From Oopsacas minuta (Eukaryota; Animalia; Porifera), in assembly GCA_024704765.1 (NCBI GenBank), contig JAKMXF010000044.1:558001-622000 (forward strand): DNA of 64,000 nt, given 5' to 3'. The notes below the pieces were generated by a model, which was given only the letters and a program-made list of their open reading frames with translations, did not search any database and was not told the origin of the DNA. This document shows, piece by piece, positions 400 through 18,333 of this stretch (its first letter is position 1; every line of letters begins with the position of its first letter). A program made the translations under genes and the position numbers.

Positions 400-1077
400 A
401 TGATATCAATGGAATGTCCATCAATGAATCAAGAGCTATTTAAGCAAGGAGCAGAGGCTCGTATATACAAGAGTTCTATATTTAACAAACCCTGTATAGT
501 GAAAGAGAGGTTCCTGAAGTGTTACAGACATCCTACTCTGCATAAGAAGCTGAGTGATAAGAGGATGATACAAGAAGCACGCTCATTAGTCAGATGTCAT
601 ACTATAGGAGTTAGAACTCCGTTAGTATATCACACAGACCTAGACACACACAAACTATATCTAGAGTTATTACCACATCCTCTACTCAATGACCTTATAT
701 CCTCACTAGAAGCCAGAGAGCAACAATCAGCTGATATAACAGACACGATAAGAGATGTAGGTAGACAAATAGCACTAATGCATGATAATGACGTCATACA
801 CGGGGACCTTACTACACTTAATATACTCGTTGATATTAAGTCAGGGGATAGCTACTTTATAGACTTTGGTCTTAGCTCTGTATCAAGCCTATCAGAGGAT
901 AAGGCAGTAGATTTGTATGTGTTAGAGAGAGCTATAACTAGTTCACATCCTAAAATGTCTCAGCTGTTCACTGATATTCTAACCTCGTATGCACAGTACT
1001 CCAGTAAGACTGCTAAAACACTCAATAAACTGAAGGAGGTGAGACAGAGAGGAAGAAAGAGGATCATGATTGGATAG
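400..1077 (+). CDS. TP53RK: TP53-regulating kinase (PRPK/Bud32, KEOPS subunit), intronless
   Basis: KQGAEARIY, KERFLKCYRHPTL, HGDLTT, IDFGL, EDKAVDLYVLERA and a C-terminal VRQRGRKR.MIG are Bud32/PRPK hallmarks. Confidence 0.93.
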   Translation: MISMECPSMNQELFKQGAEARIYKSSIFNKPCIVKERFLKCYRHPTLHKKLSDKRMIQEARSLVRCHTIGVRTPLVYHTDLDTHKLYLELLPHPLLNDLISSLEAREQQSADITDTIRDVGRQIALMHDNDVIHGDLTTLNILVDIKSGDSYFIDFGLSSVSSLSEDKAVDLYVLERAITSSHPKMSQLFTDILTSYAQYSSKTAKTLNKLKEVRQRGRKRIMIG

Positions 1078-1561
1078 AGGGGCAGCTAGTTGATCCAATT
1101 ATCCTGATATCACCTAGTGTGAGATTTAATATACATGAACATATCATATGTATGCATACTACCTAGTACGTACCGACTCATTCGACTCATCACCGACTAA
1201 AACGAAGTTTATCTTACAGCATTGAGAAAATGTCTTACATACAAATCATAAATCACACTGTTTTATACATAAAGTATTGACTCGAATAGTAGCCTCATAA
1301 TAATCACCTCTCTTCGGGAAAACTGTAGTATACCTTCAATCGCCATATAAGCAGGTGGGAGAGGCTACTGATTGAGGTAATAAAGTATAACTATGAGGAA
1401 TTGGGTGACGGTAAGTTGTTCGACCTTCTTCCTAATATCTAAGCATCATATAGTATACTTAACTTTATTTGCGTGGTTTTGTATCTTGTGTAATCAGGTT
1501 ATATTATCGTCTTTGTACCAAAGTAACCTATTAAGCAATATCTGTTAGCTAGCTTATTCTC

Positions 1562-4500
1562 ATGAGTTCTCGTTATCGAGACAGAGAGATAGAGGAGGTC
1601 TCCCCAAGGAGAGGAGGTCGTCGCAGGAGTCGTTCTAGAGAAAGAAATACACGTAATCACAGGAGCAGGAGCAGGTCTCTCTCCCCGTGGGATAGGAACA
1701 GACACTCGTATAGATCTAGAAGGAGTAGATCCAGATCTAGAGAGAGAGGGGGGCAGTCTGGAAGAAGTGGTAGGAGTAGATCTAGGTCTCCTCGAGAGGA
1801 CAGGCGAGACCGCTTGAAGGAGAGGAGGAGAGATAGTAGATCTTCATCTACTGAGAATATGGATACTAACAGGTGCTATACTATATACTATATGCTTACA
1901 GTAAACTCTCGTTATAACGAAGTGATCGCCATCAGAGTTTCATTTCGTTATATGCGCTAATGCGTTGCTAGTGGAGTAAAATCAATTTCTTTCTAGCTAT
2001 AGAGAGTAAGGATTAGGAAGTACGTACTTCATTATACTGGGAGTTTACTCTATTTATTATCATCACAAGTCATTTAAGTAATCTACAGATCACGTAAGAA
2101 TAATACAAAAGATAGAGGAGAAGACTCTCCTATGGATCAGAGCTATGAATACAATAATCTAGACAACGGTCTTGAAGAAGGAGAACTGAGTGCTCCCGTA
2201 AAGAGACAGCCTATATCTCTAGAGGAGTTGTTAGAGAGGAAAGCTCAGAAAGAGAAGGAAGAGTCTAGACCTCTGTACCTATCCAAAGAGGAGAGAGCTC
2301 AGATTGCTGTCGAGAGGAGGAAAAGAGTTAGTTATTAGATGTGTAGCTATTCATATGTTATGACGCAATATATTATAGGAGGTAGAAGAGATGAGAAAGA
2401 ATCAGAATTTGGAGAAGAAACCTCTGTTCTCGGATTTTGATGAAATATCAAGGTTTGGAAAAGATAAAGAGCGTAGCCCGGACACAACAGAGCTGGAGGA
2501 GCGTAGGAGACAGAGAGAGGAGAATATAGTACAGAAGGATCTCCTGAAGGAGCAGGAGGCTATCAAGAATAGATATCTCGGAGGGGAGAAGAAGAGGAGA
2601 CGGATGAGACGTCTCAATGAGAGGAAGTTTGTATTTGATTGGGATGCTAGTGAGGATACTAGTGTAGATCATAATTCTCTATACAAGCAGAAGCATCAAG
2701 TGCAAGTGAGTACTATTTTGTTATATAGCTACAGTCAACTCCAGTTATATCGAAGTCTTAAATTGTACGAATATGGTCTCATAAATTTATGGGTTATATC
2801 AAAGTAATTATTGCAATCCTTTGTATTGAGCTTTGACATAACGGGAGTTTACTGCACATTCATTATTATTGTTGTTATTATGATTATTTACAGCTGTTTG
2901 GTCGCGGACGAATCGCTGGAATAGATATTAACGCTCAGAAGAGAGATCAATCCAAATTCTACGGTGACCTCCTGAGCACACGTCGTACTGACGAGCAGAA
3001 GCTAAGAGCAGAAGAATTAGTCCTGAGACAGAAAGAGAGAGAGAAGAAAGCCCTCTGGGATTCTAGACACTGGTCTGATAAGGAGCTGGATCAGATGGCA
3101 GAACGTGACTGGCGTATTTTCAAGGAGGATTTTAATATTTCTACAAAAGGCGGTAGGATACCCTGTCCTATCAGGTCATGGAGGGAGTCTGCTATTCCTA
3201 GATCTATATTAGATGTAATAGCTAAGCTACAGTATGAGGATCCTACCCCTATACAAAGACAAGCTATTCCTATAGGTCTACAGAATCGTGACGTTATTGG
3301 TATAGCAGAGACTGGTAGTGGTAAGACAGCTGCATTTCTCATCCCACTTCTTGTTTGGATACAGAACCTTCCTGCAGAAGAGAGAGGAACGGAATCAGAT
3401 GATGGACCTTATGCTATTATTCTAGCTCCTACCAGAGAACTAGCTCAACAGATTGTGGAGGATACTAATAAGTTTGCTCAGGGTCTGGGGATTAGGACTG
3501 TAGGAGTTATAGGAGGTCTATCTAAAGAGGAGCAGGGTTTTCTACTCAGAGTAGGTTGTGAGATTGTGGTAGCTACTCCTGGGAGGCTAGTTGATGTACT
3601 AGAGAACAGGTTAGTTCATTATATTATACGTAAGAATCTATTTTAAGTACAGTAATTTATAACGAATTGCTCGTGACCCGGTTTCATTTGTTATAAGCAG
3701 TATTTTGTTGTAAGCGAAGTAAAATCAATTTCGTACTTTCAAACTATATACAATAAAGTACCACTTGATTATAACGAGAATTTCGCTGTATCCGAATTGT
3801 TATCACTGGAGTTTACTGTATCTTTATTTACAAACAATACAACCACACAATGAATGAAAACATTTACATACTTCAGAACTCATCTATTACCTTCCCATAC
3901 TCAGTAGCAGCACTGCCTACGAATAGAACATGATTGTCTAATATTTCTTGTTTAGACAGCTTACCATCTACATTACTGTCTGACATAGAGATTAGGTACC
4001 TGGCCTCTAACAGTGCATGATCGTATCCCTCAGGCATAACCCAACTCCCTACCTCTTCAAAGTCCAGCTTACCGTCATTATTCATGTCCCGATGTTTCTT
4101 GAAATCAGAACTGTGTCTTTCACGATCTTCGTTACTCATATTATCATCATCACGATTCATTTCACTCAAGTACTCGTGTATTTCTATTGTATTACTCTTG
4201 TCTAGATCCAAATCTCTGATCGCTTCCTCGATTACAACAGTCCTCATGTGTGGGAAGTCATCTGGGTGAAGAAAAGCTTTGAACTCTTCAAAGTCTAAAT
4301 GTTTGTCTTTGTTAACATCAGCTAGATCCCATCTCTTCCTCTCCCACACTAATTGCTCCCCAAATGTTATACCCCTTCCCTCATCCGCCATCAAGTGATG
4401 GTTCTCTCCCTGTTGTATTTCTTCTCCGAATGATACCCTAATGTATGCATCCCAGTCCAGTTCTTTCATCTGTGGTTCTGCTGTCTTGTAAGCTGTCCAA

Positions 4501-7500
4501 AATCTCTCTGCTTCATTGAATATCATTCGTCTATTCACATGAGCTATCCAGGAGACTAATTCCTCCTCGGTTACGTGACTATCTCCATTCTCATCTATCT
4601 TATCTACCAACTCGCTCAGTTGCATCTTAGCTGCTCTAGGAGGGAGGTGGTCGTATATCTCAGCCTGGCTCTCTCCAACAAATTGCTCGTGATGATACTC
4701 AGGGTCTTCCCTTAGCTGATCCGCGTGGATACGTTCGTTCCCGAATTTCCCACCATGAGTAGCCCGTGGAATCGTGGGCAATAGTTGTACGTATTCGTAT
4801 GTCAATGCCAAAAATAATGCGAGGTATAAGAACTTCATTTTGATTGATTCAAGCTGTTATACTCAAATATTAGTTAAGTGATAGATTATATACTCAAATT
4901 CTTTGTTATAACTAACTTCAATATTACTGATAGACACTACTGAATAGTATTGTTAGTACATAGAGACAATCAAGCCGTATCATTCTACTGTAACCAGGAC
5001 ACAATTATGTTACTAGCTATATTTGTAACTTGAGCCACGCATATTACTTGTTTGATTTCTATTGGCTATTCTCAATAATATTTTGTATTTTACACTTATG
5101 GACGTAGCCGAAATTTCGTCATTTCTTATACGCAGTTGATGATAATCTTTGCTTTAGTTTGTTTTCTCACTGTTAATTTTGTAGATTATTAGACAAAATA
5201 TATTTATTAATAATATTGTGTATTTTATTGTTCGTTTATTCTCCCTCTTATTCCTTCATTTTATGTTCATTATTAGAACTTCGTCATATTTTATGAGAAT
5301 GCTTAATATTATCCATTCTTTAAATCTGTATCAGATGCATCATTTTTATGTACTGATGTGGATGAATAAGAACTGGTGGCTTATAGCGCACTGTAATTCC
5401 TGCATGAGAGCTAATTGGATATATTAAAAAGTGTGGTAAAATCACTAAAATATTTTATGAATACAGTTGAATAATCGCAGTAGGAATACCGACAATTCGC
5501 ACCACGACAATTCGCACCTAATTTGATTGGCCTACTGTGTCCACTTGCCCAGCCTCAACAGATGCTCCTGGACTTTGAGAAGGGCGTGATTACCAGCTTT
5601 GAGCATGTCTGGCCTAACACAGTAGTGAAGTGCTGCTTCTTCCACCTCACACAGAATATCTGGCGACATGTGCAGTCTGTAGGGCTGCAGTCTGCCTACA
5701 CACATGACGAAGAGTTAGCAAGGGCTGGTATCCTCCGGATGCACATAGCTAACTCTTCGTCATGTGTGTAGGCAGACTGCACATGTCGCCAGATATTCTG
5801 TGTGAGGTGGAAGAAGCAGCACTTCACTACTGTGTTAGGCCAGACATGCTCAAAGCTGGTAATCACGCCCTTCTCAAAGTCCAGGAGCATCTGTTGAGGC
5901 TGGGCAAGTGGACACAGTAGGCCAATCAAATTAGGTGCGAATTGTCGGTATCCGATCGCGGTAATTAGAGAGGTAATGAGTTAGCGATCTGACTGACATG
6001 AAAATTGGCATTTAAATAAGATTTGGTGTAGATGGGGAGTAGAGTCCAACATGATTAATCATAGTTTCACACCTTTACCATATATTTAAAATAGTTTACT
6101 CATATGTCGGCGAGAATTTTCAGAGTCAGAGTTAATAACATTGAGTAGACAATTGATCCTAAGCTACACTCTCAGTCTACCAATAGACCTGTTAACATAA
6201 TTTATGTTCTAATTGAAATTACGTGTATGTAACTTAGTGTTCACATGCTTTCATGCAAATTTAGAAGAATTAGATGCAAGATGATATTATGAGAAAGACG
6301 CTTATGAAACTCACATTATCTCATAATTATATTAGATTTGGCATGTATAAGTAACAGACGTGCATTAGGTCGAATCTCGGTGTTGGTATTATGTCGAATT
6401 CAAAATCCATGCATTTGATCGAATTTCTGTGTTTGGCATTAGGCCGTTCTCGGTATCTCGGTTTCATTTCGTTATAAGTGGGTTTTGTTATAACCGAAGT
6501 GTACGGTATATGTACAGTTGTTTGTAAGAATAGACTTAATTCATTAATCCGAATTCGTATACCGTAATACGTAGTTCGTTGTAAAAAGACATCAATTAGA
6601 GTGGAATCAGAAAAACTGGGATTCTGAATTTTGTTGATTAGCTCAATATTTGTCAATATCAGTATAGTTCGTCTATTAACAATTGCCTTATTAGCAAGTT
6701 TTTTTAGGGTCACAATGGCCCAACTTGCATTAATTATGTTTCCTATTATCAAGTTCGCTATACGCAAGTTTTCTCATAAAAACACGACTTTCTAATAACT
6801 TAATAAGGGAATCTTTAGTTCGTTTATAAGCAAGAAAAACTTGCTAATACACGAACTTTTATTTCGTTTATTAACTTCGGACTCTTTAGGATTCACACAC
6901 ACGTGTACTAAAATATCCTTATACGTATGATATTATCACATACACGTATGTACGTGTACATACAACAATAGAATTTATCAAATTGATTGAGTTGCTCTAT
7001 TAGCAAGTTCGCTTAATAGCAAGCTTTTCTCGTACAAAACCCAATTTGCTAATAAGCGAACTCCACTGTATCTACATTTCAACCATTATATATTATTAGT
7101 TACTATCCTTAGTCGGATATTCGTGATGAAACATTATGCATCAGCCATTTGTCCGGAATTGTCCCACTCATAAATTGATTATACAAGGTTTTCGTAAATA
7201 AAGTAGATACGTATTTATTTGTAGTGTGTTTATCAAGAGATAATATAGAATGTCAATTCTGAATCTGATTTTCACACTTTTATATATTATCTTCTTCCCA
7301 ATTTCAGATATCTGGTCCTCAACCAGTGTACATATGTGGTCCTGGACGAGGCTGACAGAATGATAGATCTCGGTTTTGAACCAGATGTGAATAAAATTCT
7401 AGAATTCCTTCCTGTCTCAAATCAAAAACCAGATTCTGATGAAGCTGAGAATCCAGAGTTGATGGGACGGAACTTACATTCCGCTAAGGCTAAGTACCGG

Positions 7501-8995
7501 CAAACTGTAATGTTCACTGCTACCATGCCTTCAGCAGTGGAGAGACTAGCTAGAACTTATCTGAGAAGACCAGCTGTCGTGTACATAGGATCAGCTGGGA
7601 AGCCTGTTGAGAGGGTGGAGCAGATTGTCTACTTTGTTACTGAAAAAGAAAAACGAAGGAAGATGTGTGAAATATTAGGGAAAGGAATAGAACCACCTGT
7701 AATTATATTCGTTAATCAGAAGAAGGGATGTGATGTATTGGCAAAGTCACTTGAAAAATTGAGTAAGTCACGCAGCTCTATCAACTATCTACTCATATTA
7801 CTAATATATTATTCCAATTCAATAATTGGAATAATCTAATCACGTTATTTATGTAATTATGAGCAGAATTGGGAAATTATTAAGAATCTTAGAATTTGGA
7901 ATATTTAAGTCATTAATTAATTGAGTTTCTCTTTGAACTCAAGAAATATATAACGTAATACATATTGGATATGATTCACGAGTCTATTGGCAGAAATCAT
8001 CAAATCAGTGACCACGAGCTATTTACTTTGATAAAAGAACGTGAAATACAATTTCCTGAAAATTACTATCACATTTACCATTATGTAGTCAGGAAGGATA
8101 TACTAACAATTAATTGTATTTGATTCAATTTTGATTAGCTATAGACTACTTTGTATTATGTCATAGTAAGACAACGTATTATAACCCTATATGGTCTTGT
8201 GATTGAAGTAGCATGACTTTAATTCCCCCAATTTGGGTATCATACAGCTCCAAGTTCTTAGCGTCATAAGCCTGGGTTTGATTTACAGTGATCATGTCCG
8301 GTCCGTCCGTTCACCTATGCGTCTCTACTTGCGGCATTTAATAATATTGGCATGCTTGGGAGAATTTATAAAGATCAAATGTATTAGTTAATGTTTCTAT
8401 TTAGTTATTCAACATAAGTACAGCGCATCTCGTTTTTACAAATACAATTAACACGAATATATGATAAGGAGTACAAATTTGTCATATTATCTGTCCCCTT
8501 CGGTCCGTCCTGGTCGGTTAGGTCCCGGTCTATAGATTGTAGCAATCTGCAACAATATCCTCTAGATAATATCATAACCTTAATGCTTATTTAGATTACA
8601 GAGCTACTGTTCTACACGGTGGAAGGAATCAGGAACAGAGGGAATATGCACTTGCTAGCTTAAAATCAGGGTCTAAGGATATATTGGTGGCTACAGACGT
8701 TGCCGGTAGAGGAATTGATATTCGTGATGTATCAATGGTAATCAATTATGATATGGCTAAGAACATTCAGGATTATACGCATAGAATAGGGCGAACAGGC
8801 CGGGCGGGTAAAGAGGGAACAGCAGTTAGTTTTCTGACTAAAGACGATTCAGGGGTATACTACGATCTGAAACAATTGCTGATAACTAGCCCTGTAAGTA
8901 CCTGTCCTGCTGAGTTAATGAATCATCCAGATGCACAACATAAGCCAGGTACTGTCATGACCAAAAAGAGACATGAAGAAACTATTTTTGCTTAG
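1562..8995 (+). CDS. DDX23: DEAD-box splicing helicase DDX23/Prp28; exons 1562-1872, 2089-2326, 2379-2705, 2894-3609, 7308-7762, 8595-8995
   Basis: RS-rich N-terminus, [52 protein letters not shown]-terminal HPDAQHKPG. All five introns are GT-AG and the exon phases join in frame. Confidence 0.93.
1899..2050. mobile_element. Tc1/pogo-type MITE in DDX23 intron 1
   Basis: Ends cagtaaactc / gagtttactc with TA on both sides. Confidence 0.65.
3650..3818. mobile_element. Tc1/pogo-type MITE, same family as 1899-2050
   Basis: ta|cagtaa...gagtttactg|ta; shares internal ttataacgaa and gtaaaatcaatttc motifs with 1899-2050. Confidence 0.6.
3873..4838 (-). CDS. Calumenin/reticulocalbin (CREC family) secretory EF-hand protein, intronless, nested antisense in DDX23 intron 4
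   Basis: Signal peptide, about six EF-hands ([60 protein letters not shown]), and a C-terminal [12 protein letters not shown] resembling calumenin's HDEF. Confidence 0.9.
   Translation of the reverse strand: MKFLYLALFLALTYEYVQLLPTIPRATHGGKFGNERIHADQLREDPEYHHEQFVGESQAEIYDHLPPRAAKMQLSELVDKIDENGDSHVTEEELVSWIAHVNRRMIFNEAERFWTAYKTAEPQMKELDWDAYIRVSFGEEIQQGENHHLMADEGRGITFGEQLVWERKRWDLADVNKDKHLDFEEFKAFLHPDDFPHMRTVVIEEAIRDLDLDKSNTIEIHEYLSEMNRDDDNMSNEDRERHSSDFKKHRDMNNDGKLDFEEVGSWVMPEGYDHALLEARYLISMSDSNVDGKLSKQEILDNHVLFVGSAATEYGKVIDEF
5483..5954. mobile_element. Fold-back non-autonomous MULE: TIR + transposase DDE fragment, inverted-duplicated
   Basis: Arms 5483-5719 and 5748-5954 with a 28-nt loop. 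Arms encode LLDFE...[15 protein letters not shown] (MULE transposase). Flanks atcgcagta (5474-5482) and atcgcggta (5955-5963) form a 9-bp TSD with one mismatch. Confidence 0.88.
6440..7068. repeat. Cluster of degenerate pogo-type MITE fragments
   Basis: Recurrent ttcgttataag / gctaatag motifs ending in gaactccactg|ta; similar to 37553-37610. Confidence 0.45.
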
Positions 8996-9718
8996 AAACC
9001 GTAGATGATCGGAATTGAATTATGTCGTTTGCCTTAATAGCCAGTTTGAAAGTATATTTCATGATGTGTATCAGTTAGGGCTGATTCATCCATTGCATTA
9101 TATACTAAAATTGATCATACTATGCAGTGTATACTTTATTCTATATTTCTGTATTGTAATGTTTATGGATTTCCTAACCTTTATATGAATTGAAAATGAC
9201 ATCATTTCATTTATTTTATTTGCTCTAAATATTTGTTATCGATTGCAATTCATGGATCAAATACACGATTACAAAACTTAAAGTTGTTACCATTTGATAT
9301 TTAATTTAATAAAATAATCCTAACTAGCTAATCACCTCATTCGTAGTTTACTGGCACAGATCAATACACTTGCTATAATTGCTATGTGTTTAATATTTGA
9401 GCTAATATATAACCTAAAACTACAGGCTCTTGGTCCATGCACGATATATCGACCACAAGCCGATATTATTAATTTCCACTATACCAAATCTCAAAACTCT
9501 ATGAATTTGATATCCTGAGAAATACTGGAAACTTGGACATTATGCCAATTGTACATATTCTACTCTTCCCCTACCCACAAACTAGTTTAATTATGTGCTC
9601 TATGAGCATTCGTTTCGAACGGATCTTTCTTACTAATAAGCCCCGCCTTTCCGCTTCCCTAATTTTTTCAAACTGTTTAATTCCAATTCTAAAGAAAGTT
9701 GGACTATCCCCCACTAGA

Positions 9719-10664
9719 ATGGCGTCAAACAATCCAGGAGATGAAAATGCAGTAATAAATGATACTGAAGATCTGCCACGACAGGTTGATGTTCGTAAAA
9801 TGAAACCTACGATCCTGCGTAGACAATTGACAGCAGCTTGGAATAAACGGACAGATGCTATATATGTGAGACAATTTGGTCCCAAAGCAATACCGATGGA
9901 GTTATACCCCACGCTCCAGAAATATGGAGAGATAGAAGATGCTGACAGTGCCTACCATCTCACATGGGAGTCTCAACCTGAGAATGTTCTCATTGTTAAG
10001 AAACCTGGGGACCCAGCAATTATTGAAAAGTTCAAAGAATTTGCTACATTTTTAATTGACAAAAAAGGTAAGTAATTGTTAGTAGAATTTGTCTATCTAA
10101 TTGTTTGATTCTACCTGAGTGTCTGTTCAGAAAACTAATTTCAATATTCGGAAATTGTTAAATTGAAGCTGGTACATCTGCTGCGGTTTGTCATAGCTAT
10201 TCAATTCAAACAATTCTTGTGGCACAAGTTCCCATAACCTTGCTGTATGCGCCATTCACTATGAATCCTATCATTTCCCATACCTCTCAAATAGCATGTA
10301 TCAGAGTACTAGCATTACTATTGTGTAACATTAGGTACTCTGTAACTACTTTGTTATCGATCCTACTTGTGTATTGGATACTTGTTATTCTTCTTGTAGC
10401 CATTATCTTGTAATGCGATTGAAGTCTTATTTATTGATAAGTACTGTCAATAAGTATATTGTTTATTCATTTTAATTGCTATTGCCTGTATTGGCGTTTT
10501 ATCCTGCAAATTATACGCAATTTTAATGTGTTTGTGTAAGTGTTTTTTGTAATCATCAGGCTAGGTTTCATTAAACATGTATGTAAGATTGTACGCATAT
10601 GCTTGAATGTTATAGAGAAGTACTACTTGTATTTTATAAAAATTTCAATTTTGAAAGACAACAG

Positions 10665-10696
<32 letters not shown>

Positions 10697-13600
10697 CCCT
10701 TCTATGTACTTATCTGTACCTGTCAAGAAAATAGTTGAATAAAATTTTTATTTCAGCATTAACTGATACGAATAGCTTCGCTTGCTCGCTCTGCGCGGCT
10801 TGCGAACACTTTGTATTCGCATGTAACTCAGCACTTCGTGCCTCGAATTTTCATAAGAACTATTATTTACACATGAATACCTTAAAAGTGCGAAAATTGA
10901 AATCAGGGTACTTCATTACTCCCCGGTATAACCGCTGAAAGTAGGTTACTGAGACTATTAAGAAATTTGTTTACTATATATTTATAAAAACAATAATTAA
11001 TTCAGTAATTTGATAGAAGATTTTACATTATTAACTGTACTGACTAATACAAATACATATATAGTGGCTCAGTTCTAAAATGGTTGACTCAGTCTATACT
11101 TATGTATTTACGTATCTAATTAATTTATAAAGACAACAAATACATTTAGATATGATTAATTCAAAAGTATGAACATCAGATTCTGCATATTCGCTATGTT
11201 TAGTCAAGTTTTATTGAATTGTGTTTACTTTCTTGGTTAACACGATAAATACGGTACATAGTTATGCGACATCTCGGAATTGAGAAATTCGAATTAGATA
11301 AAACATTCCATAAATCCTTTCCTTGACAACGGACAGACAGACAGACTAGTAATTCAATAATATAGATTACAGAAAATTATTATGCAGTTTTACTATTAAT
11401 GATATTACCATTTGTAAACACATGGGTTAATTAATTTCAAATAGAATCTCGTGTTTCGTTTTTTGTACTTAAATAATGTCATTTGATACTTTCAGAAAGT
11501 TTGTAATTTTATCTAGTTCAGTAGATTAGGTACATTTACTGTAAAAAGTATTTAAGTAAGAATTGTATTGAAGTTATTCATCAATTTCTCATAAATTCTG
11601 AAAAGAAACAATATGTCACGATACAGTTTTATATCTTATATCGAACCTAATCACTGTATCACTATTAATCCATCCTGCTCCCTTCTTGTCAGACCCGAAT
11701 CACGTCATGTTCAAATTCAAGAAGTAAAATCATATCCTCCTCAAAACAGAGATAGTCAAAAACTAATCAAACGCATTCAAAGAATTAAAACTAGACTTGA
11801 TCGAAAAAATGATAGAACAAAACAAATCCTGAAGTTTAGAGAATTCACTGGAAATTGGGATCTAGTAATATAGTGATTTGACAAAGTTTAAAATTTCTTA
11901 AAATATTAAACATATATATTGCAATATTTGTGATATTTTAATCATTGATTTTATGTGAATTTTTTGTTCAAAACTGTACAACAAATGTTGAAAAACTATG
12001 TTTCCTTCACACTATATATTGCAACTTGTACAATCCAATGTGCTGGTTCGGAATCCGCAGTGTATTTTACTCCAACACGTCACAATTTTGTTGAAACTGC
12101 AACAAATTTTTTTAATTTGTTATGAAAAAGTTATCTGAATTCCTGAACTTTAGTGTATGTGAATATTTAATTATAGAAATAACTCTTCGTATTGTCAATT
12201 TGTATACGCACTACATTTTAAGAATTTTAGTCATTCTTTCTCTATTTTTAACGTTTCATTTTATGATTCATTAGTATTTTGATAAATTTATCCGAAACAC
12301 CGCTTTATTTCGGTTTAGTTAGATCTAAATACAGATAATACAATCCTCAATGTTCTGTTTTCCATTACTACTGGCTATTTCCGCAGGAAAACTTTTGAGA
12401 AAATTAGCAATTATCAAATTTTTGACCTGATTTTAGAAAATTGTGACGTTCTGAAGTATAATGAAATTCATAATCGGAATCAGCATGTTCGATAACATAT
12501 AATGGGATATTTAGTGTCCAAGAAACAGAATCCTTGTTGTACAGTGAATTATTTACCGATTAGTTTTTTAGCCAAAGTTGATCAGACTTTCTTTTTCCTC
12601 GAATGTCTCTTCCGATAGTTTAAATCACTTTCTTAGTTCAACATTATTTCTTTAATTCTGTAGATAAATTTTACGTACACAGTATTGATTTGTAATGGTG
12701 ATTTTCTAGCTATAAATTTGACTGATAAATTCAGTCCTAATCTAGTAGATCACCTTTCATTACTTGTGCATATATATATTGGAAGGATTGATGTATTACA
12801 ATGATAAAGCATGCACTAAACCAAATATTCCAGATGTCTTCAAGCACACAATTTCTCTCAAATGATAAGACTGGATCTTCTCAGAGCTATCAGTACCAAA
12901 GAGATACTTCCTCAAAGGAAAGAATTGAATACAAACCTAGTATATATATTTTATCACACAAATTACACAAAACAAAAGTAGAAAGCGAAGAATTGAACGT
13001 TCAAAACAGATTAGGTCTGGACAAGATTAAAGATGAGCTACAACGAATGCGTTCTGAAACGCAACAGCTGCGAGTGAGAACAGAAAATATCGTCACTGTC
13101 CTCGGCGATATCGATAAAGAGCGCAAGTACCGCGAGTTCACCGGAAACTGGGATCAGCTGTGACGAATTAATCATAATTTAATTCCTCGCTTCTACACTT
13201 TTTATCAGCATTTCATTCACATGACTATACATATGATAATTGAGCTTCTGTTGTTGCTTATTATAATAATAAACCTTCATGAAAATAACACTTATTAAAC
13301 ATCCAAATAAGGAATTCTATTAGACTAACACGCTGATGATAACTTCATTAAATTATATAACGTATTTATTTAATAATTCATCATATTACTCGTATTTTTG
13401 TGGATTAGCCTCAGAAAATTTATATCCAACTCATCAACTTATGTCTCTACCATGTTAATAATCACACATACGTATAACTGTGTGTCGTTACAGATAGTAG
13501 AGTAATGGATGCATCATTAAGTTGCCAAACGAATTCAATTATTTTGGCAAACAAAGCAATTAATTTTAGCAAATGGTTAAAATTATGCGCTCTATATATT

Positions 13601-16600
13601 GGTATCATTTCAACATTTCCCTTTGTAGAGTGTGGATTCATATAGTCAGACACATCAGGTACTTCACTACATCCACATATTCGTCCTCAGGCGTTGCGCC
13701 TTCTCAGCTATAATCCAGCTATAATTGAATTTTCAGTTCAGTTGCCAAAATAATTGAATTCATTTGGCTAGATAATACTAGATTCGTAGTGTAATTTGTA
13801 TAATCATTTTAGGTTACAAATTGTATTTGGAGAAGGATGCCAAGTCTGACCCTCTACTCGAAAACTTCAGCTTGATGTCACAGATTATAACTTTAGAGAA
13901 TCCTCAAATTGTTGATTTCGTGATTTGCCTTGGAGGGGATGGAACATTCCTGTACGCTACCTCCCTCTTCAAATCCTGCACTGTACCACCCATAATGTGC
14001 TTTGGTATGGGAAGTCTTGGCTTCCTAACACACTTTGTAGCTCAGAACTTTAAAGATGATATTGATCGGATAACTACAAAACATATGAGTATAACTCTTA
14101 GAAGCAGGATCGAGGCTATGATTACTCCTACTTACTCCGGTGTGGGTGCACCTACTTCTGATCTTCCTATTTCTAGCCAGTCTCTACCAACAGACTCCCC
14201 CTTGTCCGAAACCAAACCAGAATCACGTGATCAAAGACTAATTAGAAGGAGAACTAGGGCAATGTTCTCTGAATCTGGTTAGCGATCCTGCATATTCTCT
14301 ACTTTGGATTAATATAATTCTTAGAGTAATACTGTTAATTTATAGGAGATGTTAATATAATCGAGGAATTCGGGACACCGGAAGCTAAGTACTTTACTTG
14401 TATAAATGAAGTGACAGTAGACCGTGGTGTATCTCCATACCTTACACAGATAGAGATATATCTGAATAACTTTAAAATAACAACAGCACAAGCTGATGGT
14501 ATAATAGTAGCTACTCCAACAGGGAGTACTGCATACTCTCTAGCTGCTGGAGCTTCTATGCTGCATCCTAGTACTGAGGCTTTTATCATTACGCCTATAT
14601 GTCCTCACTCTCTTTCATTCAGGTATTGTATAACATCATTGACATGTATGTGGGCAGGAAGAAATCTTTGTTAACCTGTGTAATTTATGCTACCGCGCTT
14701 CGCTTCAGCGCTCGCTGCGGAACAGCTAGTGCTCCAGGTTAGCTTATGTATTAAACAGATAAATTTTTAGTGTTATTCACTACGTAACAGAATATCCCTC
14801 GAACTCACAGAATAATTAAAATTTTAAGATTACATTATCCATGGTCCATCCAAATTTCATTGAATTGCCTTCTGTGGTGACACTGGAGATGCTATGTCGC
14901 TTTTGGTTATTAATCTCGGCATTTCACTTCGACTGTATTTGATCTTAGATTAAAACAACAAACAAACAGATAACAATATAGTTTATACTAAAAGTATTTA
15001 ATTGCTTAACTGTTTGGTTAAATAATTAATTTTACTTCTAAGAGTCTCTATTTATTTAGTACAAGTATTAAATTATTAATTAGTGTAGTATTTTGCTGAT
15101 TTCATCTCGATAGGAATAAGCGTGATTATCGCAGAAAATGCTAGCTCTGCAATACCACAGTTATCATTTCTATTTCTGCTCATCATTACATATCCTTCAT
15201 TTCCCCATTCTGTTCCCCAGCTATTCTTCACTATCCAGTAATCTTCCTTCTCTTCTGTGCCATATCCCACCAATAGCATTGCATGGTTCAGATTGTTTGG
15301 GTCGCAATCTTCATCATAGAAAATCCCTGAACTATATACCTGAAAGCTTCTTGTTACATCAATCACCACAAGCACTGGTCCTCTTGTAGCACAAATTATC
15401 TTAAGATCTGTTTCATTACCGCTTATCACCATCTCTAATAGTACTCCTGTTGTTCCCTGCACCACGAGCTTGCTGTTGTACTTACAAGAGGAATTTACAC
15501 CTTGATGATATGGATAGTCAGATTCTCTCTCTAACCCAAATTTATGTATGTACTCTACAATAGGTCCGACTGAATCTAGTCCATCTATCTTGCAAGTAGG
15601 ACAACAGTCGAGTATTTGCTGGATAGATAGAATGTTCAGTTTCCCAGTCCTGACTGCTAGATCACTCTCAATCATATCTACAATAGTCAGGATTAAAGAA
15701 CTACCTAATGCTCCTTGATTCTTAACACTTGTAACTACTCCTTGAGTTCTCCAATCCAGCTGATCAGGAATATCTGTCATTCCAGTTCTTCTACCCACAT
15801 CCTTCTGTAATTCTCTTGTATTAGTACTCTCTCCTATCGAAGGGATTATTCTGCAGTTAGTTGCTACTATTTGCACAAGCAGGAGTAGAATTGCCTGCTT
15901 CACCATTGAATTAATCATCCACCTAATTTTCGTTGAATGATAAATAAATAAATAAATAGTTAGCTTCATTTAATAGACTACTCGTATTCTCGTTAAGCTT
16001 AGAGATTAATCGAGACTACTGCTATTTTCCGTTTAGTTGAGTGGAATATACTCAGACTACTGTAGTGGAGATCGGGATAGTCTAACATTGTATGTAATAT
16101 TACAGCTAACTAGCCCAAATTTAATACACTCCAATTACGTAGACTGCATTATCATATGTCTACTTTATCATATGTCTACTTTATCATATGTTTACTTATA
16201 TGTATATTTTTACCTAATTTGGGTATTCAACGGAGTAATATTTCAATGTCAAATGTGAAATGGATAATTATAGCCAATGCAGTACAAAACTTGAATATTG
16301 CATATGTGAAAGTATGAACATTTCTATATTTGTATTCAGATACTTACTGGTTTAACTACCACGAGGGTTGTTACACAATCACATGTAATCTGAACTGTAA
16401 CCACATTTATATTACTATTGCTATTATATTAGTCGATTTTAATAAACAAGCGATTTCAGTATTTTGTAATTTCAACGAAGGGTTTGCTTGCTAGTGTACT
16501 TTTTTAAATTATTGTATTTCATCATTTCCATATTTAAATTATTGAAATGCATTGCCAGATTTACTATTCAGCAAATCTAGTCGATATGATTGTTGTTGTA

Positions 16601-16904
16601 CAATTCTCCTTTAGATAGCTTAGTACGCCATACTACTTGTTTTAATTACCTCTTTTCCAGGCCTATTGTGGTACCAAATGGAGTACAGATAAAACTGAAG
16701 TTAGCTGAGACAAGTAGACACAGTGCTTGGGTCTCTTTCGATGGTAGAGACAGACAGGAAGTGAAGTTGGATGACGAAATATTATTAAAAATAAATGCTA
16801 ACCCTGTACCTTGTTTGAATAACACTGGACATGTTAGTGATTGGTTCAAAAGTTTGATAAATGGGTTGAACTGGAATGTTCGTGAACCTCAAAAGAAACT
16901 ATAG
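9719..16904 (+). CDS. NADK: NAD kinase; exons 9719-10067, 13813-14277, 14346-14622, 16661-16904
   Basis: [80 protein letters not shown] and LNWN motifs. GT-AG junctions are phase-consistent. Confidence 0.93.
11613..11873 (+). CDS. Small unknown protein (86 aa), basic coiled coil + C-terminal REFTGNWD, in NADK intron 1
   Basis: ATG-stop ORF; C-terminal motif shared with 12801-13163 through synonymous-only differences. Confidence 0.6.
   Translation: MSRYSFISYIEPNHCITINPSCSLLVRPESRHVQIQEVKSYPPQNRDSQKLIKRIQRIKTRLDRKNDRTKQILKFREFTGNWDLVI
12801..13163 (+). CDS. Small unknown coiled-coil protein (109-120 aa) with C-terminal REFTGNWD, in NADK intron 1
   Basis: ATG-stop ORF (second ATG at 12834), more GC-rich than its flanks, heptad-like [18 protein letters not shown]; motif shared with 11613-11873. 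Confidence 0.65.
   Translation: MIKHALNQIFQMSSSTQFLSNDKTGSSQSYQYQRDTSSKERIEYKPSIYILSHKLHKTKVESEELNVQNRLGLDKIKDELQRMRSETQQLRVRTENIVTVLGDIDKERKYREFTGNWDQL
13523..13768. mobile_element. Small inverted-repeat element (MITE-like)
   Basis: gccaaacgaattcaattattttggcaa at the left end vs gttgccaaaataattgaattcatttggc at the right end. Confidence 0.5.
15076..15918 (-). CDS. Cathepsin L-family (papain C1A) protein with catalytic Cys-to-Ser (silicatein-like), no I29 propeptide, intronless, nested antisense in NADK intron 3
   Basis: Signal peptide from Met 15918 (ORF open from 15969), [56 protein letters not shown]. Confidence 0.88.
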   Translation of the reverse strand: MINSMVKQAILLLLVQIVATNCRIIPSIGESTNTRELQKDVGRRTGMTDIPDQLDWRTQGVVTSVKNQGALGSSLILTIVDMIESDLAVRTGKLNILSIQQILDCCPTCKIDGLDSVGPIVEYIHKFGLERESDYPYHQGVNSSCKYNSKLVVQGTTGVLLEMVISGNETDLKIICATRGPVLVVIDVTRSFQVYSSGIFYDEDCDPNNLNHAMLLVGYGTEEKEDYWIVKNSWGTEWGNEGYVMMSRNRNDNCGIAELAFSAIITLIPIEMKSAKYYTN

Positions 16905-18333
16905 CAATCTCTCTTTCTAGTAGCGATTATAGAAAGTTACTTCTGACAAGGTTAATTAATTCTTCTGAACATATTCTACTCAAAATAAAAAAATTCATAT
17001 TCTGTGTTTTTTGCTTTTACTGTTGATTTTTTTTGGTTTTTATTGAATTGTTTACTGTATAGCTTTTCTTCTGTAGAATATGAAATATATTTTAACACTC
17101 CATTCTACGCATGTATATTTTTGCTGTCTGATATGCAAATTGGAGGAGTTGTTCTCAGGCCCCTAGGGTCTTGATAGCAAAATCCCAAGATCGTAGTATC
17201 TTAGCATTATTTCTGGGACCCTAAGGTCCTAGCCTAAATATTCCCTCCAGGACCTTACATTTAATAATGCAATTTAACTTTATATTTTACTATTAAAATC
17301 ACCGTGAAGAAGTACAGACAGTTGAAATAGAATGATTAATCCAATAAAAGTCCATCCAAACACAAGATTAGCATGAAGTCCACATCAACGTCCCTAGGTA
17401 GCTTAATAACGAGTACAAATCAAAACTCCCAGACCCATAAGGTAGTGAACTAAATCCAACGATCCATCTATATATTGATGATCTAGGCGTGAAATAGTAC
17501 AAAATAATACAATAAATGTAAGTCTAAATGTAGGGTCCTAGATATAATTTCCCTACCAATTGAATGCAGTATCTATTAATTATATACAGTATATACACCA
17601 TATAAGAATATTATTCTAATTTAGTATATTCCTAATCCATGATTATATCGACTGGTGGATGTTTCGTCCTTGGATCTTACCTCCCCAATTTTATTATGTG
17701 AAATCAGAAATTCGTTACTGTTAAGTTTATTAATTAATACATGTATGTACAATTAAAAGAAGAGAATACTAATTTGCAAAAAGGAACTGACACGCTTATG
17801 CAAAGAAAGACCCATAACAACAACAAATTGTGCGTTAAGCTACCCTGAAACAATACTCGGTGTTTAATGATATACTAAGTGTTCGTTTCCAAGTAACCTA
17901 TATGTCAATTAGTGATTTTATGAAAGAGACCGTAAATTTGGATCAGAAAAACCTGTGACAACGAGAAATGGCTAATTTTCAGCTAACTAAGAGAATGTGT
18001 AACCCATTAGTTCATTGAAAGAGTTCCAAGCGACGAAACATCCGTTTACTGATTATATCATAAAATTCGCTATTAATATCTTATTATTTGATAATACGTA
18101 TTTATAATGAATTATGTACAGAGGTGCAGTGAGCTGCGAGCAAAATTTGAAATGATTCCATCACTCAATAATATTCTGTCACACACGTACGTATACTTCA
18201 TCCCTCTATGAATGAAGGTATGTTTGAAAGTATGTAAGTTTTATTGACCATAATTATTTGCCTTTGACAAAGTGACAGAAAAACGTGAAAATGCAAAATT
18301 AAACCCAATTAGTTCTTAGCATATAGAGAATAG

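What the first reader, a model, noticed from the sequence alone, without database searches (positions are those of the whole stretch)
15076..15918. Silicatein-like Ser-His-Asn cathepsin with no propeptide, hidden antisense in an NADK intron
Seen: the papain motif QGxCGSCW reads QGALGSSL. The catalytic Cys position is Ser (TCT, 15697-15699), C22 is Leu and W26 is Leu. His (NHAM, 15283-15285) and Asn (KNSWG) are intact. Only ~27 aa separate the signal peptide from the mature domain, so the ERFNIN/GNFD I29 propeptide is missing. The GCxGG loop is replaced by CCPTCKIDG. Established: a Cys-to-Ser swap plus LNHAM typifies silicateins, the silica-forming cathepsin L derivatives of demosponges; the rodent testins also carry Cys-to-Ser. 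Inference: this is a possibly independently evolved, pro-less silica or matrix protein or a pseudoprotease. It lacks the GASYAF motif and the serine cluster of classic silicateins.
Basis: partly seen in the sequence, partly recalled or inferred. Interest (0 to 1): 0.82.

Follow-up and report, generated by a model that had tools for sequence, protein, structure and literature searches.

The report
Glass-sponge pro-less cathepsin-like pseudoprotease
This is a real, expressed gene of the glass sponge Oopsacas minuta for a secreted cathepsin-L-like protein that has lost its catalytic cysteine and its whole propeptide. It belongs to a small family conserved in glass sponges that is most likely a non-cutting "dead protease", not a silica-forming silicatein.

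Summary
An intronless minus-strand ORF (CDS 15076-15906, 276 aa) has a strong papain-family domain. It reads Ser (TCT, 15697-15699) at catalytic Cys25, keeps His and Asn, and has no I29 propeptide. It lies antisense inside a NAD kinase intron that an RNA-like run shows spliced out (14620-16657). The genome statistics match Oopsacas minuta (Hexactinellida).

The gene is not a one-off. Eight orthologs exist, one from a Vazella pourtalesii metagenome. All lack the propeptide, all are nested in the same NADK intron, and all have intact ORFs (dN/dS 0.16-0.49).

The silicatein reading is not supported:
- The family forms its own clade (100/100) outside the silicatein clade.
- It lacks Cys22, the CG[AS]SYAF motif, the Ser cluster and the propeptide.
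- Position 25 is Ser in four members, Tyr in three and deleted in one.
- The substrate-binding Gly-Gly and the Cys22-Cys65 disulfide are gone.

The best reading is a secreted, non-proteolytic cathepsin-L derivative specific to glass sponges. Its ligand is unknown.

[quoted passage not shown] The scan has also noted two other papain-fold pseudoproteases elsewhere in this genome, but not this gene. Interest is moderate.

The parts
15076..15906 (-). Coding sequence of the pro-less cathepsin-L-like protein (276 aa plus stop; P0001). The open frame continues upstream to 15969, and an alternative ATG lies at 15918.
   Evidence: ORF list; Pfam PF00112 at 188 bits; identical public gene call P0001; the N-termini of eight orthologs align to the MVKQ start.
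15853..15906 (-). Signal-peptide-like hydrophobic N-terminus, about residues 1-18. The cleavage site is not predicted by any tool.
   Evidence: Mean Kyte-Doolittle hydropathy is 2.97 over [11 protein letters not shown], and all orthologs show the same feature. The AF2 model has a helix at residues 3-15.
15772..15852 (-). Short variable linker, residues 19-45, standing in place of the ~100-aa I29 propeptide. It contains a basic pair (RR) 5 residues before the mature start.
   Evidence: No PF08246 hit. pLDDT is below 50 at residues 17-34. The linker runs from about 10 to 50 residues across orthologs.
15121..15771 (-). Mature papain-fold domain, residues 46-262.
   Evidence: Pfam match over residues 50-263. 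PDB hits to cathepsin K/L/S at E 1e-50. AF2 pLDDT is mostly 90-98, and Foldseek gives target-normalised TM of about 0.88 to cathepsins and to silicatein alpha.
15697..15699 (-). Ser70 codon (TCT) at the catalytic Cys25 position.
   Evidence: Sequence read. Alignments A1 and A2. Orthologs carry TCT/TCG for Ser or TAT for Tyr. No variant appears in four runs.
15715..15717 (-). Gln64 (the Gln19 oxyanion-hole position), invariant across all sequences.
   Evidence: Invariant column in A1, A2 and A3.
15283..15285 (-). His208 (CAT) in LNHAM, the catalytic His position, invariant in the family.
15223..15225 (-). Asn228 in VKNSWG, the catalytic Asn position, invariant in the family.
15592..15609 (-). 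DCCPTC, the family-specific DCCxxC motif. Canonical Cys56 is followed by two new invariant Cys. It replaces the DCS...GCxGG loop, whose Cys65 is lost and whose Gly-Gly is deleted.
   Evidence: Alignments; Cys inventory; lost conserved positions C65, G67 and G68.
15391..15393 (-). Cys172, a third family-specific invariant cysteine. It brings the mature domain to 7 invariant Cys, an odd number.
   Evidence: invariant in A3.
15409..15417 (-). N-E-T sequon (Asn164), a potential N-glycosylation site present in all family members.
15051..15056 (-). AATAAA hexamer 20 nt after the stop codon. It is a candidate polyadenylation signal on motif grounds only.
   Evidence: Sequence read. RNA-like contigs extend to about 14880-15178.
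14620..16657 (+). Host intron of the NAD kinase gene (2038 nt, GT..AG). It contains the whole C1 gene on the opposite strand.
   Evidence: Spliced joint 14619>16658 in run X4, with boundaries good to +/-3. The flanking exons hit NAD_kinase_C.
14345..14619 (+). NADK exon upstream of the host intron (NAD_kinase_C domain).
   Evidence: Pfam PF20143 at 82 bits; joints 14276>14345 and 14619>16658.
16658..16904 (+). NADK exon downstream of the host intron (C-terminal part of NAD_kinase_C).
   Evidence: Pfam PF20143; joint. The same exon lies beyond the C1 gene in all seven other genomes.

Best explanation
The gene encodes a secreted-pathway, cathepsin-L-derived pseudoprotease. It belongs to a small orthologous family that I find only in glass-sponge genomes. 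Two sources are identified, Oopsacas minuta and Vazella pourtalesii. The other six assemblies are unidentified but syntenic.

**What is shown.**
- The protein keeps the papain fold. It retains 50 of 61 superfamily-conserved residues, including Gln19, His159, Asn175 and Trp177 (papain numbering).
- The nucleophile side of the cleft has been dismantled. Cys25 is Ser, Tyr or deleted. The Cys22-Cys65 disulfide is lost. The substrate-backbone-binding Gly-Gly is deleted. The central helix motif GxLEG has become VEMIES.
- The whole I29 propeptide is absent.
- The gene has stayed antisense inside the same NADK intron in all eight genomes. It is transcribed as an unspliced mRNA of about 1 kb.

**What is inferred.**
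- It does not cleave peptides. The inhibitory and chaperone propeptide became dispensable, and new cysteines (CCxxC plus Cys172) re-staple the fold.
- It works by binding a peptide, protein or matrix ligand in the remodelled cleft. Engineered C25S cathepsins trap substrates in this way, and natural C1A pseudoproteases act non-enzymatically.
- Its ligand and cellular site are unknown.
For: **The gene is real and expressed.**
- ORF and Pfam hit.
- In RNA-like run X4, high word-depth contigs lie only over 15156-15925, while the flanking intron is at 35-54. The NADK intron is spliced around the gene.

**It is conserved.**
- Seven further orthologs share 52-64% identity. All are 248-290 aa and carry only PF00112.
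- All are nested between the same NADK exons, with the same neighbours: NudC and a helicase gene throughout, and Ets in three of the loci.
- The host-gene tree recovers the same supported groupings.
- dN/dS is 0.16-0.24 in one subclade and 0.42-0.49 in the other, and every ORF is intact.

**The active site is dismantled.**
- Position 25 is Ser in four members, Tyr in three and deleted in one.
- The lost conserved residues cluster at C22, F28, G32, G36, C65, G67 and G68.

**There is no propeptide.**
- No I29 Pfam hit.
- No I29-like coding anywhere in the 64 kb window.
- No splice joint into the ORF.

**The fold is intact.**
- AF2 pLDDT is 90-98 over the mature domain, and target-normalised TM is about 0.88 to cathepsins.

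**Secretory features.**
- Hydrophobic N-terminus, an invariant NET sequon and 7 invariant Cys.

**Precedents.**
- C25S cathepsin K and V are deposited as inactive, peptide-bound forms.
- SERA5, which has Ser at the Cys position, 'plays a non-enzymatic role' (title of PMC4671257).
Against: - No biochemical data exist for any member.
- Gln19, His159, Asn175 and Trp177 are invariant, and position 25 carries a hydroxyl (Ser or Tyr) in at least 7 of 8 members. Some His-assisted chemistry is therefore not excluded.
- The gap placement in P0003 is best at positions 24-26, but placements that keep a Ser there exist at lower score.
- Signal-peptide cleavage, glycosylation and the disulfide pattern are inferred from sequence only.
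- ω of 0.42-0.49 in the Vazella-like subclade shows only moderate constraint.
- The strand of the transcript is not shown by contig data.
- Six of the eight source assemblies are not taxonomically identified.
Confidence: 0.65

Rival explanations
1. An independently evolved silicatein analogue. On this reading the hydroxyl at position 25 (Ser or Tyr), paired with His, or simply the protein surface, promotes or templates silica or organises spicule matrix in glass sponges.
For: - Ser plus His plus Asn and an LNHAM motif occur as in silicateins.
- Position 25 is hydroxyl-bearing in at least 7 of 8 members.
- The mature domain is acidic and secreted.
- The family is confined to a silica-building lineage.
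- The AU test does not formally reject a sister position to silicateins (p = 0.083).
- The O. minuta genome paper leaves open that cathepsin L genes could act in spiculogenesis.
Against: - The family lies outside the silicatein clade (100/99).
- It lacks Cys22, CG[AS]SYAF, the Ser cluster and the propeptide.
- Hexactinellid axial filament and silica proteins are reported as hexaxilin, glassin and perisilin. No cathepsin is mentioned in the text or in 19 supplementary files of that study.
- The A. vastus Ser-cathepsin, probably the ortholog, was not upregulated in the growing osculum.
- Mutagenesis indicates the triad is not needed for in-vitro silica formation, so the triad is not diagnostic.
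Confidence: 0.12
2. A still-active hydrolase in the Ser-bearing lineages only. Ser70, His208 and Asn228 would act as a serine-type triad (esterase or peptidase), with activity lost in the Tyr and deletion lineages.
For: Gln19, His, Asn and Trp177 are all invariant. Ser is kept in Oopsacas and in the Vazella-like subclade.
Against: - C25S substitutions in cathepsins K and V are used as inactive forms (PDB titles).
- The Gly-Gly substrate-binding wall is deleted and the central helix is remodelled in every member, including the Ser ones.
- Orthologs with Tyr are under equal or stronger purifying selection (ω 0.16-0.24). The conserved function therefore does not need Ser.
Confidence: 0.08
3. A cysteine protease that has moved its nucleophile to one of the new cysteines of the CCxxC motif, or a redox-active CxxC protein.
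For: Three new invariant Cys give an odd total of seven, so at least one thiol may be free. The CCxxC motif lies in the loop that normally forms the cleft wall.
Against: There is no precedent in C1A that I know of. The geometry could not be checked because no coordinates were available. The simplest reading is a replacement disulfide for the lost Cys22-Cys65 bridge.
Confidence: 0.04
4. A decaying or neutral retrocopy of a cathepsin L gene that landed in an intron, with no function.
For: It is intronless, lacks the 5' propeptide part and sits in an intron.
Against: - Eight intact orthologs sit in the same intron, with dS saturated between subclades and dN/dS below 0.5.
- It is transcribed.
- Single-exon genes are the majority in glass-sponge genomes, and this genome's canonical cathepsin L genes are intronless too.
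Confidence: 0.02

Closest known systems
Silicatein alpha/beta of heteroscleromorph demosponges (e.g. Tethya, Suberites; PDB 6zq3)
   Same: Both are cathepsin-L-derived papain folds with Ser at Cys25, retained His and Asn, and an LNHAM motif. Identity is about 38-41% and target-normalised TM is 0.88.
   Different: - The target is in a separate clade.
- Silicateins keep Cys22, the Cys22-Cys65 bridge, the Gly-Gly wall, the CG[AS]SYAF motif, a Ser cluster (DSSRCSSS) and a full I29 propeptide. This family has none of them.
- Ser is not conserved in this family.
Canonical cathepsin L of the same genome (G000:C354 and C298; loci L003, L002)
   Same: Same fold, also single-exon genes, 35-40% identical in the mature domain.
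   Different: The canonical genes have a ~100-aa I29 propeptide, CGSCW, GCxGG and LDHGV. The target has none of these and sits on a long stem of 1.99 changes per site.
[quoted passage not shown]
   Same: It is a single Ser-type cathepsin in a glass-sponge genome, so it is probably the ortholog.
   Different: It is mentioned in one sentence only. It was reported as not differentially expressed in the growth zone.
Plasmodium SERA5 papain-like domain (PMC4671257)
   Same: Natural papain-fold protein with Ser at the Cys position, reported to act non-enzymatically.
   Different: It is a central domain of a large multi-domain parasite protein with its own pro-region. There is no specific relationship, and I did not align it here.
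Engineered C25S cathepsin K and V (PDB 5j94, 5jh3, 7q8g)
   Same: Same single substitution at the nucleophile. They are among the best sequence and fold matches, and they are used as inactive forms that still bind peptides or effectors.
   Different: These are laboratory mutants with an otherwise intact cleft. The sponge family has additionally lost the Gly-Gly wall and the Cys22 bridge.
Rodent testin and TINAG/TINAGL1 (C1A non-peptidase homologues). This comparison is from my own knowledge and was not tested here.
   Same: Secreted papain-family proteins with Cys25 replaced by Ser and with matrix or junction-binding roles.
   Different: Testin keeps a propeptide. TINAG is cathepsin-B-like with extra N-terminal domains. 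They are unrelated lineages.

Membership tests
Peptidase C1A (papain) superfamily | Papain-fold domain recognisable by sequence and structure | tested here: met
   PF00112 at 188 bits against a cutoff of 20.7. PDB cathepsin hits at E 1e-50. AF2 plus Foldseek give target-normalised TM of about 0.88.
Peptidase C1A (papain) superfamily, as an active peptidase | Catalytic Cys25 nucleophile | tested here: not met
   Ser (TCT) in the target. Ser, Tyr or a deletion in the orthologs.
Peptidase C1A (papain) superfamily, as an active peptidase | His159, Asn175 and Gln19 | tested here: met
   Invariant in all eight members.
Peptidase C1A (papain) superfamily, as an active peptidase | Substrate-binding Gly-Gly of the GCxGG loop and the Cys22-Cys63/65 disulfide | tested here: not met
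   C22, C65, G67 and G68 are lost or deleted in 7 of 7 members.
Cathepsin L-like subfamily | I29 (ERFNIN/GNFD) propeptide | tested here: not met
   No PF08246 hit in the target or in any ortholog. No I29-like coding in the window. No upstream splice joint.
Silicatein | Ser at Cys25 with His and Asn retained | tested here: met
   Met in the target. Ser is not conserved in the family: four Ser, three Tyr and one deletion.
Silicatein | Placement inside the silicatein clade of heteroscleromorph demosponges | tested here: not met
   The silicatein clade (100/99) excludes the family, and the family clade is 100/100. A sister position is not formally rejected (AU p = 0.083).
Silicatein | CG[AS]SYAF motif with Cys22 retained | tested here: not met
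   The target reads LGSSLIL. All 14 silicateins listed before the script stopped read CG[AS]SYAF.
Silicatein | Serine cluster preceding the catalytic His | tested here: not met
   Family members have at most 3 Ser in any 8-aa window, and none at that site. Silicateins mostly have 4-6 (DSSRCSSS; Tethya beta 3, Efluv G2 elsewhere).
Silicatein | I29 propeptide present in the precursor | tested here: not met
Silicatein | Location in the spicule axial filament, and silica formation | not testable with these tools
   The literature reports hexaxilin, glassin and perisilin, not cathepsins, from hexactinellid silica. In-vitro silica assays do not discriminate.
C1A non-peptidase homologue (pseudoprotease) | Fold retained, nucleophile replaced, gene kept under purifying selection | tested here: met
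C1A non-peptidase homologue (pseudoprotease) | Demonstrated lack of peptidase activity | not testable with these tools
   This needs recombinant protein.

The most novel reading that the evidence does not exclude
Glass sponges independently recruited a cathepsin-L derivative, as demosponges did with silicatein, by a different route. The route would be loss of the propeptide, a hydroxyl residue (Ser or Tyr) facing the conserved His, and a new CCxxC staple. The protein would take part in silica or spicule-matrix formation, which would make cathepsin co-option for biosilica a convergent event in the two siliceous classes.
Probability: 0.1. Interest if true: 0.8.

Novelty: new variant of a known kind. 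Interest (0 to 1): 0.42.

Why it matters
Whether glass sponges have silicateins was debated for 15 years and is now answered 'no'. This gene is the obvious candidate to be mistaken for one.

The evidence here helps close that question. The gene belongs to a discrete, conserved, propeptide-less family whose 'silicatein Ser' is interchangeable with Tyr. That also explains the lone Ser-cathepsin noted in Aphrocallistes.

For protease biology, it is a natural case of a cathepsin-L fold that has been kept for a long evolutionary time without its I29 propeptide. The propeptide is normally needed for folding and latency. Here the disulfide set is rewired instead, which makes the family a useful test case for how papain folds can fold alone.

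It is also a clean example of a nested antisense gene pair kept together across a whole animal class.

Tried and rejected
- **Retrogene or pseudogene.** Rejected by eight intact syntenic orthologs, dN/dS below 0.5 and transcription.
- **Upstream I29 exon.** A tblastn search of seven propeptides against the whole window gave only chance hits with E above 0.3. No splice joint enters the ORF.
- **Fold search to separate silicatein from cathepsin.** Uninformative. Both give target-normalised TM of about 0.88.
- **AU test of family plus silicateins as one clade.** p = 0.083, so it is not formally rejected. I do not claim rejection.
- **Supplements of the A. vastus paper, to check Avas.s001.g1214.** None are held as text.
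- **Accession search for SAMN14422900 and related terms.** No paper was found by these accessions. The link to Vazella came from Table S1 of PMC7426153.
- **Taxonomic identity of the six ENA assemblies (ERZ accessions).** Could not be established.
- **Model coordinates.** Not available, so distances between the new Cys and His208 could not be measured.
- **Large representative-protein search.** Not used. The word-index search with a family profile already showed a sharp score gap (379 to 253 bits).
Full report
**1. Observation.**
The window holds a 297-codon open frame on the minus strand at 15076-15969. Its product matches Pfam Peptidase_C1 (PF00112) end to end at 188 bits and has no I29 inhibitor-domain match. 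Solved cathepsins K, L and S and silicatein alpha match at E 1e-43 to 1e-51.

Reading the sequence directly:
- The QGxCGSCW motif reads QGALGSSL.
- The Cys25 position is TCT at 15699-15697.
- Cys22 and Trp26 are both Leu.
- The His of LNHAM is CAT at 15285-15283.
- KNSWG is intact.

On the plus strand, NAD kinase exons lie at about 13821-14276, 14345-14619 and 16658-16904 (Pfam).

**2. Organism.**
The window is contig 44 of an assembly of 61,460,524 bases in 365 contigs. The Oopsacas minuta genome paper reports 365 scaffolds, about 61 Mb and 36% G+C. Table 1 of the Aphrocallistes vastus paper lists O. minuta at 61.46 Mb in 365 scaffolds. I take the genome to be O. minuta, a hexactinellid.

**3. 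Expression and gene model.**
Four public runs from one sample hold the region. Three have flat word-depth of about 105-130, as DNA would. The fourth, X4, behaves as RNA:
- It carries GT..AG joints at 14276>14345 and 14619>16658.
- It has zero depth in some intergenic bins and carries Illumina adapter tails.

The second joint removes a 2038-nt NADK intron that contains the whole ORF. Inside that intron, X4 has high-depth contigs (2,400-4,400) only over 15156-15925. The flanks at 15926-16541 and 14694-14847 stand at 35-54. This indicates a separate abundant RNA co-extensive with the ORF.

No joint connects the ORF to another exon, and no run reads a different letter at 15697-15699. A translated search of the entire window with seven I29 propeptides gave only chance hits.

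Caveats: these are contigs, not reads. They give no strand and only approximate ends, and the DNA runs may come from the assembled sample. Ortholog N-termini favour the ATG at 15906, giving 276 aa, which is identical to the public gene call P0001.

**4. It is one of a family.**
The word-index search found six proteins at 53-64% identity. They are 248-290 aa long, carry PF00112 only and lie on long ENA contigs. All other hits are at or below 47% identity, and most of them carry I29. A family-profile search added one more member, P0239, at 379 bits. The score then fell to 253 bits or less.

P0239 comes from run SRR11455651. Table S1 of Bayer et al. 2020 lists that run as a Vazella pourtalesii metagenome, and Vazella is a rossellid glass sponge.

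In all seven other loci the gene lies antisense between the same two NADK exons. NudC lies on one side (seen in six of the seven loci) and a DEAD/helicase gene on the other (annotated in five). A tree of the host NADK exons recovers the same supported groupings as the C1 tree. These are therefore orthologs that have stayed nested since their common ancestor.

All the ORFs are intact. For pairs that are not saturated, dN/dS is 0.16-0.24 in one subclade and 0.42-0.49 in the Vazella-like one.

Nested and single-exon genes are ordinary in glass sponges. In A. vastus, 12.4% of genes are nested, and most genes in both species are single-exon. The genome's canonical cathepsin L genes are also intronless. 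The gene architecture is therefore not odd in itself.

**5. What changed in the protein.**
Against 36 canonical cathepsins and silicateins, the family keeps 50 of 61 positions that are at least 90% conserved. The kept positions include Gln19, His159, Asn175, Trp177 and two of the three disulfides.

The 11 lost positions include the following (cathepsin L numbering of this genome's L003 paralog):
- C22, F28, G32 and G36, on the loop and central helix that carry the nucleophile.
- C65, G67 and G68, on the wall that binds the substrate backbone.

Position 25 varies within the family:
- Ser (TCT or TCG) in the target, P0002, P0007 and P0239.
- Tyr (TAT) in P0004, P0005 and P0006.
- Deleted in P0003 under the best-scoring gap placement.

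For P0003, placements that keep a Ser score 55 or more BLOSUM units lower but cannot be excluded.

Other family features:
- Three new invariant cysteines, in a DCCxxC motif and at Cys172, bring the mature domain to seven Cys.
- An NET sequon is invariant.
- The mature domains are acidic, with pI 4.7-5.6.
- Every member starts with a hydrophobic, signal-peptide-like segment. A short linker of about 10 to 50 residues follows, with a basic residue or pair a few residues before the mature start.

AlphaFold2 with a 43-sequence alignment models residues 46-260 at pLDDT 90-98 and leaves the linker disordered. Foldseek matches cathepsins K, L and S and silicatein alpha equally, at target-normalised TM of about 0.88.

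**6. Is it a silicatein?**
I built a maximum-likelihood tree of 41 sequences: the family, 15 named silicateins, two 'silicatein-like' proteins, sponge and other cathepsin L sequences, and four O. minuta paralogs. I left out the multi-exon O. minuta paralogs because only fragments were in hand.

Results:
- The family is one clade (100/100) on a long stem.
- The silicateins form another clade (100/99) that excludes it.
- The disputed Aulosaccus 'silicatein-like' sequence nests among demosponge silicateins.
- Forcing the family together with the silicateins costs 11.5 log-likelihood units (AU p = 0.083). That arrangement is disfavoured but not formally rejected, and long branches are in play.

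On sequence hallmarks, the listed silicateins keep Cys22 and CG[AS]SYAF, and most have a Ser cluster before the His; the one silicatein in the alignment carries a full propeptide and all carry the I29 Pfam domain. The family has none of these features.

From the literature:
- Silicateins are now regarded as absent from Hexactinellida.
- Glass-sponge silica proteins are hexaxilin, glassin and perisilin.
- The hexaxilin study's text and 19 held supplementary files never mention a cathepsin outside the introduction and reference list.
- Catalytic-residue mutants of silicatein, and even human cathepsin L, form silica in vitro. The triad is therefore not diagnostic.

**7. Mechanism.**
Several points are shown: the gene is conserved, transcribed and carries secretory-type features; the fold is intact; the nucleophile side of the cleft is dismantled; and there is no propeptide.

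The rest is inferred. The protein is not a peptidase. With no latent activity to mask, the propeptide became dispensable, and the rewired cysteines stabilise the fold. The protein then acts by binding a ligand in the altered cleft. This matches C25S cathepsins, which trap peptides (PDB titles), and SERA5, which acts non-enzymatically.

I put this at about 0.65. The main rival (about 0.12) is an independent silica or matrix role using the Ser or Tyr hydroxyl with His, or using the surface. A Ser-type hydrolase in the Ser lineages (0.08), a relocated Cys nucleophile or redox CxxC (0.04) and a functionless retrocopy (0.02) follow.

**8. Novelty and verdict.**
Papain-family pseudoproteases with Ser at Cys25 are a known kind. 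This gene is already predicted in the public annotation, and its probable A. vastus ortholog has been mentioned once.

What I did not find in the papers searched:
- Definition of a discrete glass-sponge family.
- The complete loss of the propeptide.
- The Ser/Tyr/deletion variation at the nucleophile site.
- The rewired cysteines.
- The class-wide nesting in NADK.

I rate it a new variant of a known kind with moderate interest (0.42). Of its alternatives, the pseudoprotease one is supported and the silicatein-like one is not.

The scan's earlier notes list two other papain-fold pseudoproteases elsewhere in this genome, but not this gene.

Noticed in passing
window 13462-13769, 14694-15001 and 17312-17465: In the DNA-like runs the word-depth jumps from about 110 to 1,000-14,000 over these short stretches. 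They are high-copy interspersed repeats. One lies immediately 3' of the C1 gene, and inverted ('opposite strands') joints occur at 13526-13732.
   Followed up: no
window 14763-14834: All four runs, DNA-like and RNA-like, contain a contig that skips 70 bases here (TT..AC, not a splice motif). This looks like an indel polymorphism or repeat-unit difference against the assembly, inside the NADK intron.
   Followed up: no
G000:C133:240471-241610 (locus L004:1021-2160, + strand): A very divergent 380-aa C1 protein with a propeptide-length N-terminus and CSSCAVF at the active site (Cys25 kept, Trp26 is Ala). Its end branch of 4.15 is the longest in the tree.
   Followed up: partly
P0144 (Aulosaccus sp. 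'silicatein-like protein'): In my tree this hexactinellid-labelled sequence nests inside demosponge silicateins (95/91 node). This fits the published view that early hexactinellid 'silicateins' were contamination.
   Followed up: partly
P0141 and P0153 (Halichondria panicea 'procathepsin L-like'): Both fall inside the silicatein clade. One is sister to Suberites silicatein alpha at 100/99. Their automatic names therefore understate what they are.
   Followed up: no
P0240 (Parthenolecanium corni, 336 aa): A scale-insect C1 protein without an I29 domain and with CISSWAF (Ser at Cys25), followed by a second partial C1 domain. It is another independent propeptide-less Ser-type homologue.
   Followed up: no
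same genome, other pieces (scan notes s1-293508 and s1-221517; the latter lies about 128 kb before this window on the same contig): Earlier first-reader notes report a cathepsin-L-like gene with Cys25 replaced by Gly, and a papain-fold protein with Ser at Cys25 and the rest of the triad replaced. O. minuta may carry several independent C1 pseudoproteases. Neither matched my query at E below 1e-5 on contig 44.
   Followed up: no
loci L020-L026: The microsynteny NudC - NADK (with the nested C1 gene) - DEAD/helicase holds across the unidentified ENA assemblies, with an Ets gene before NudC in three of them; the Vazella contig shows the NADK-helicase part. Intron size between the last two NADK exons varies from about 1.5 to 5 kb.
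   Followed up: partly
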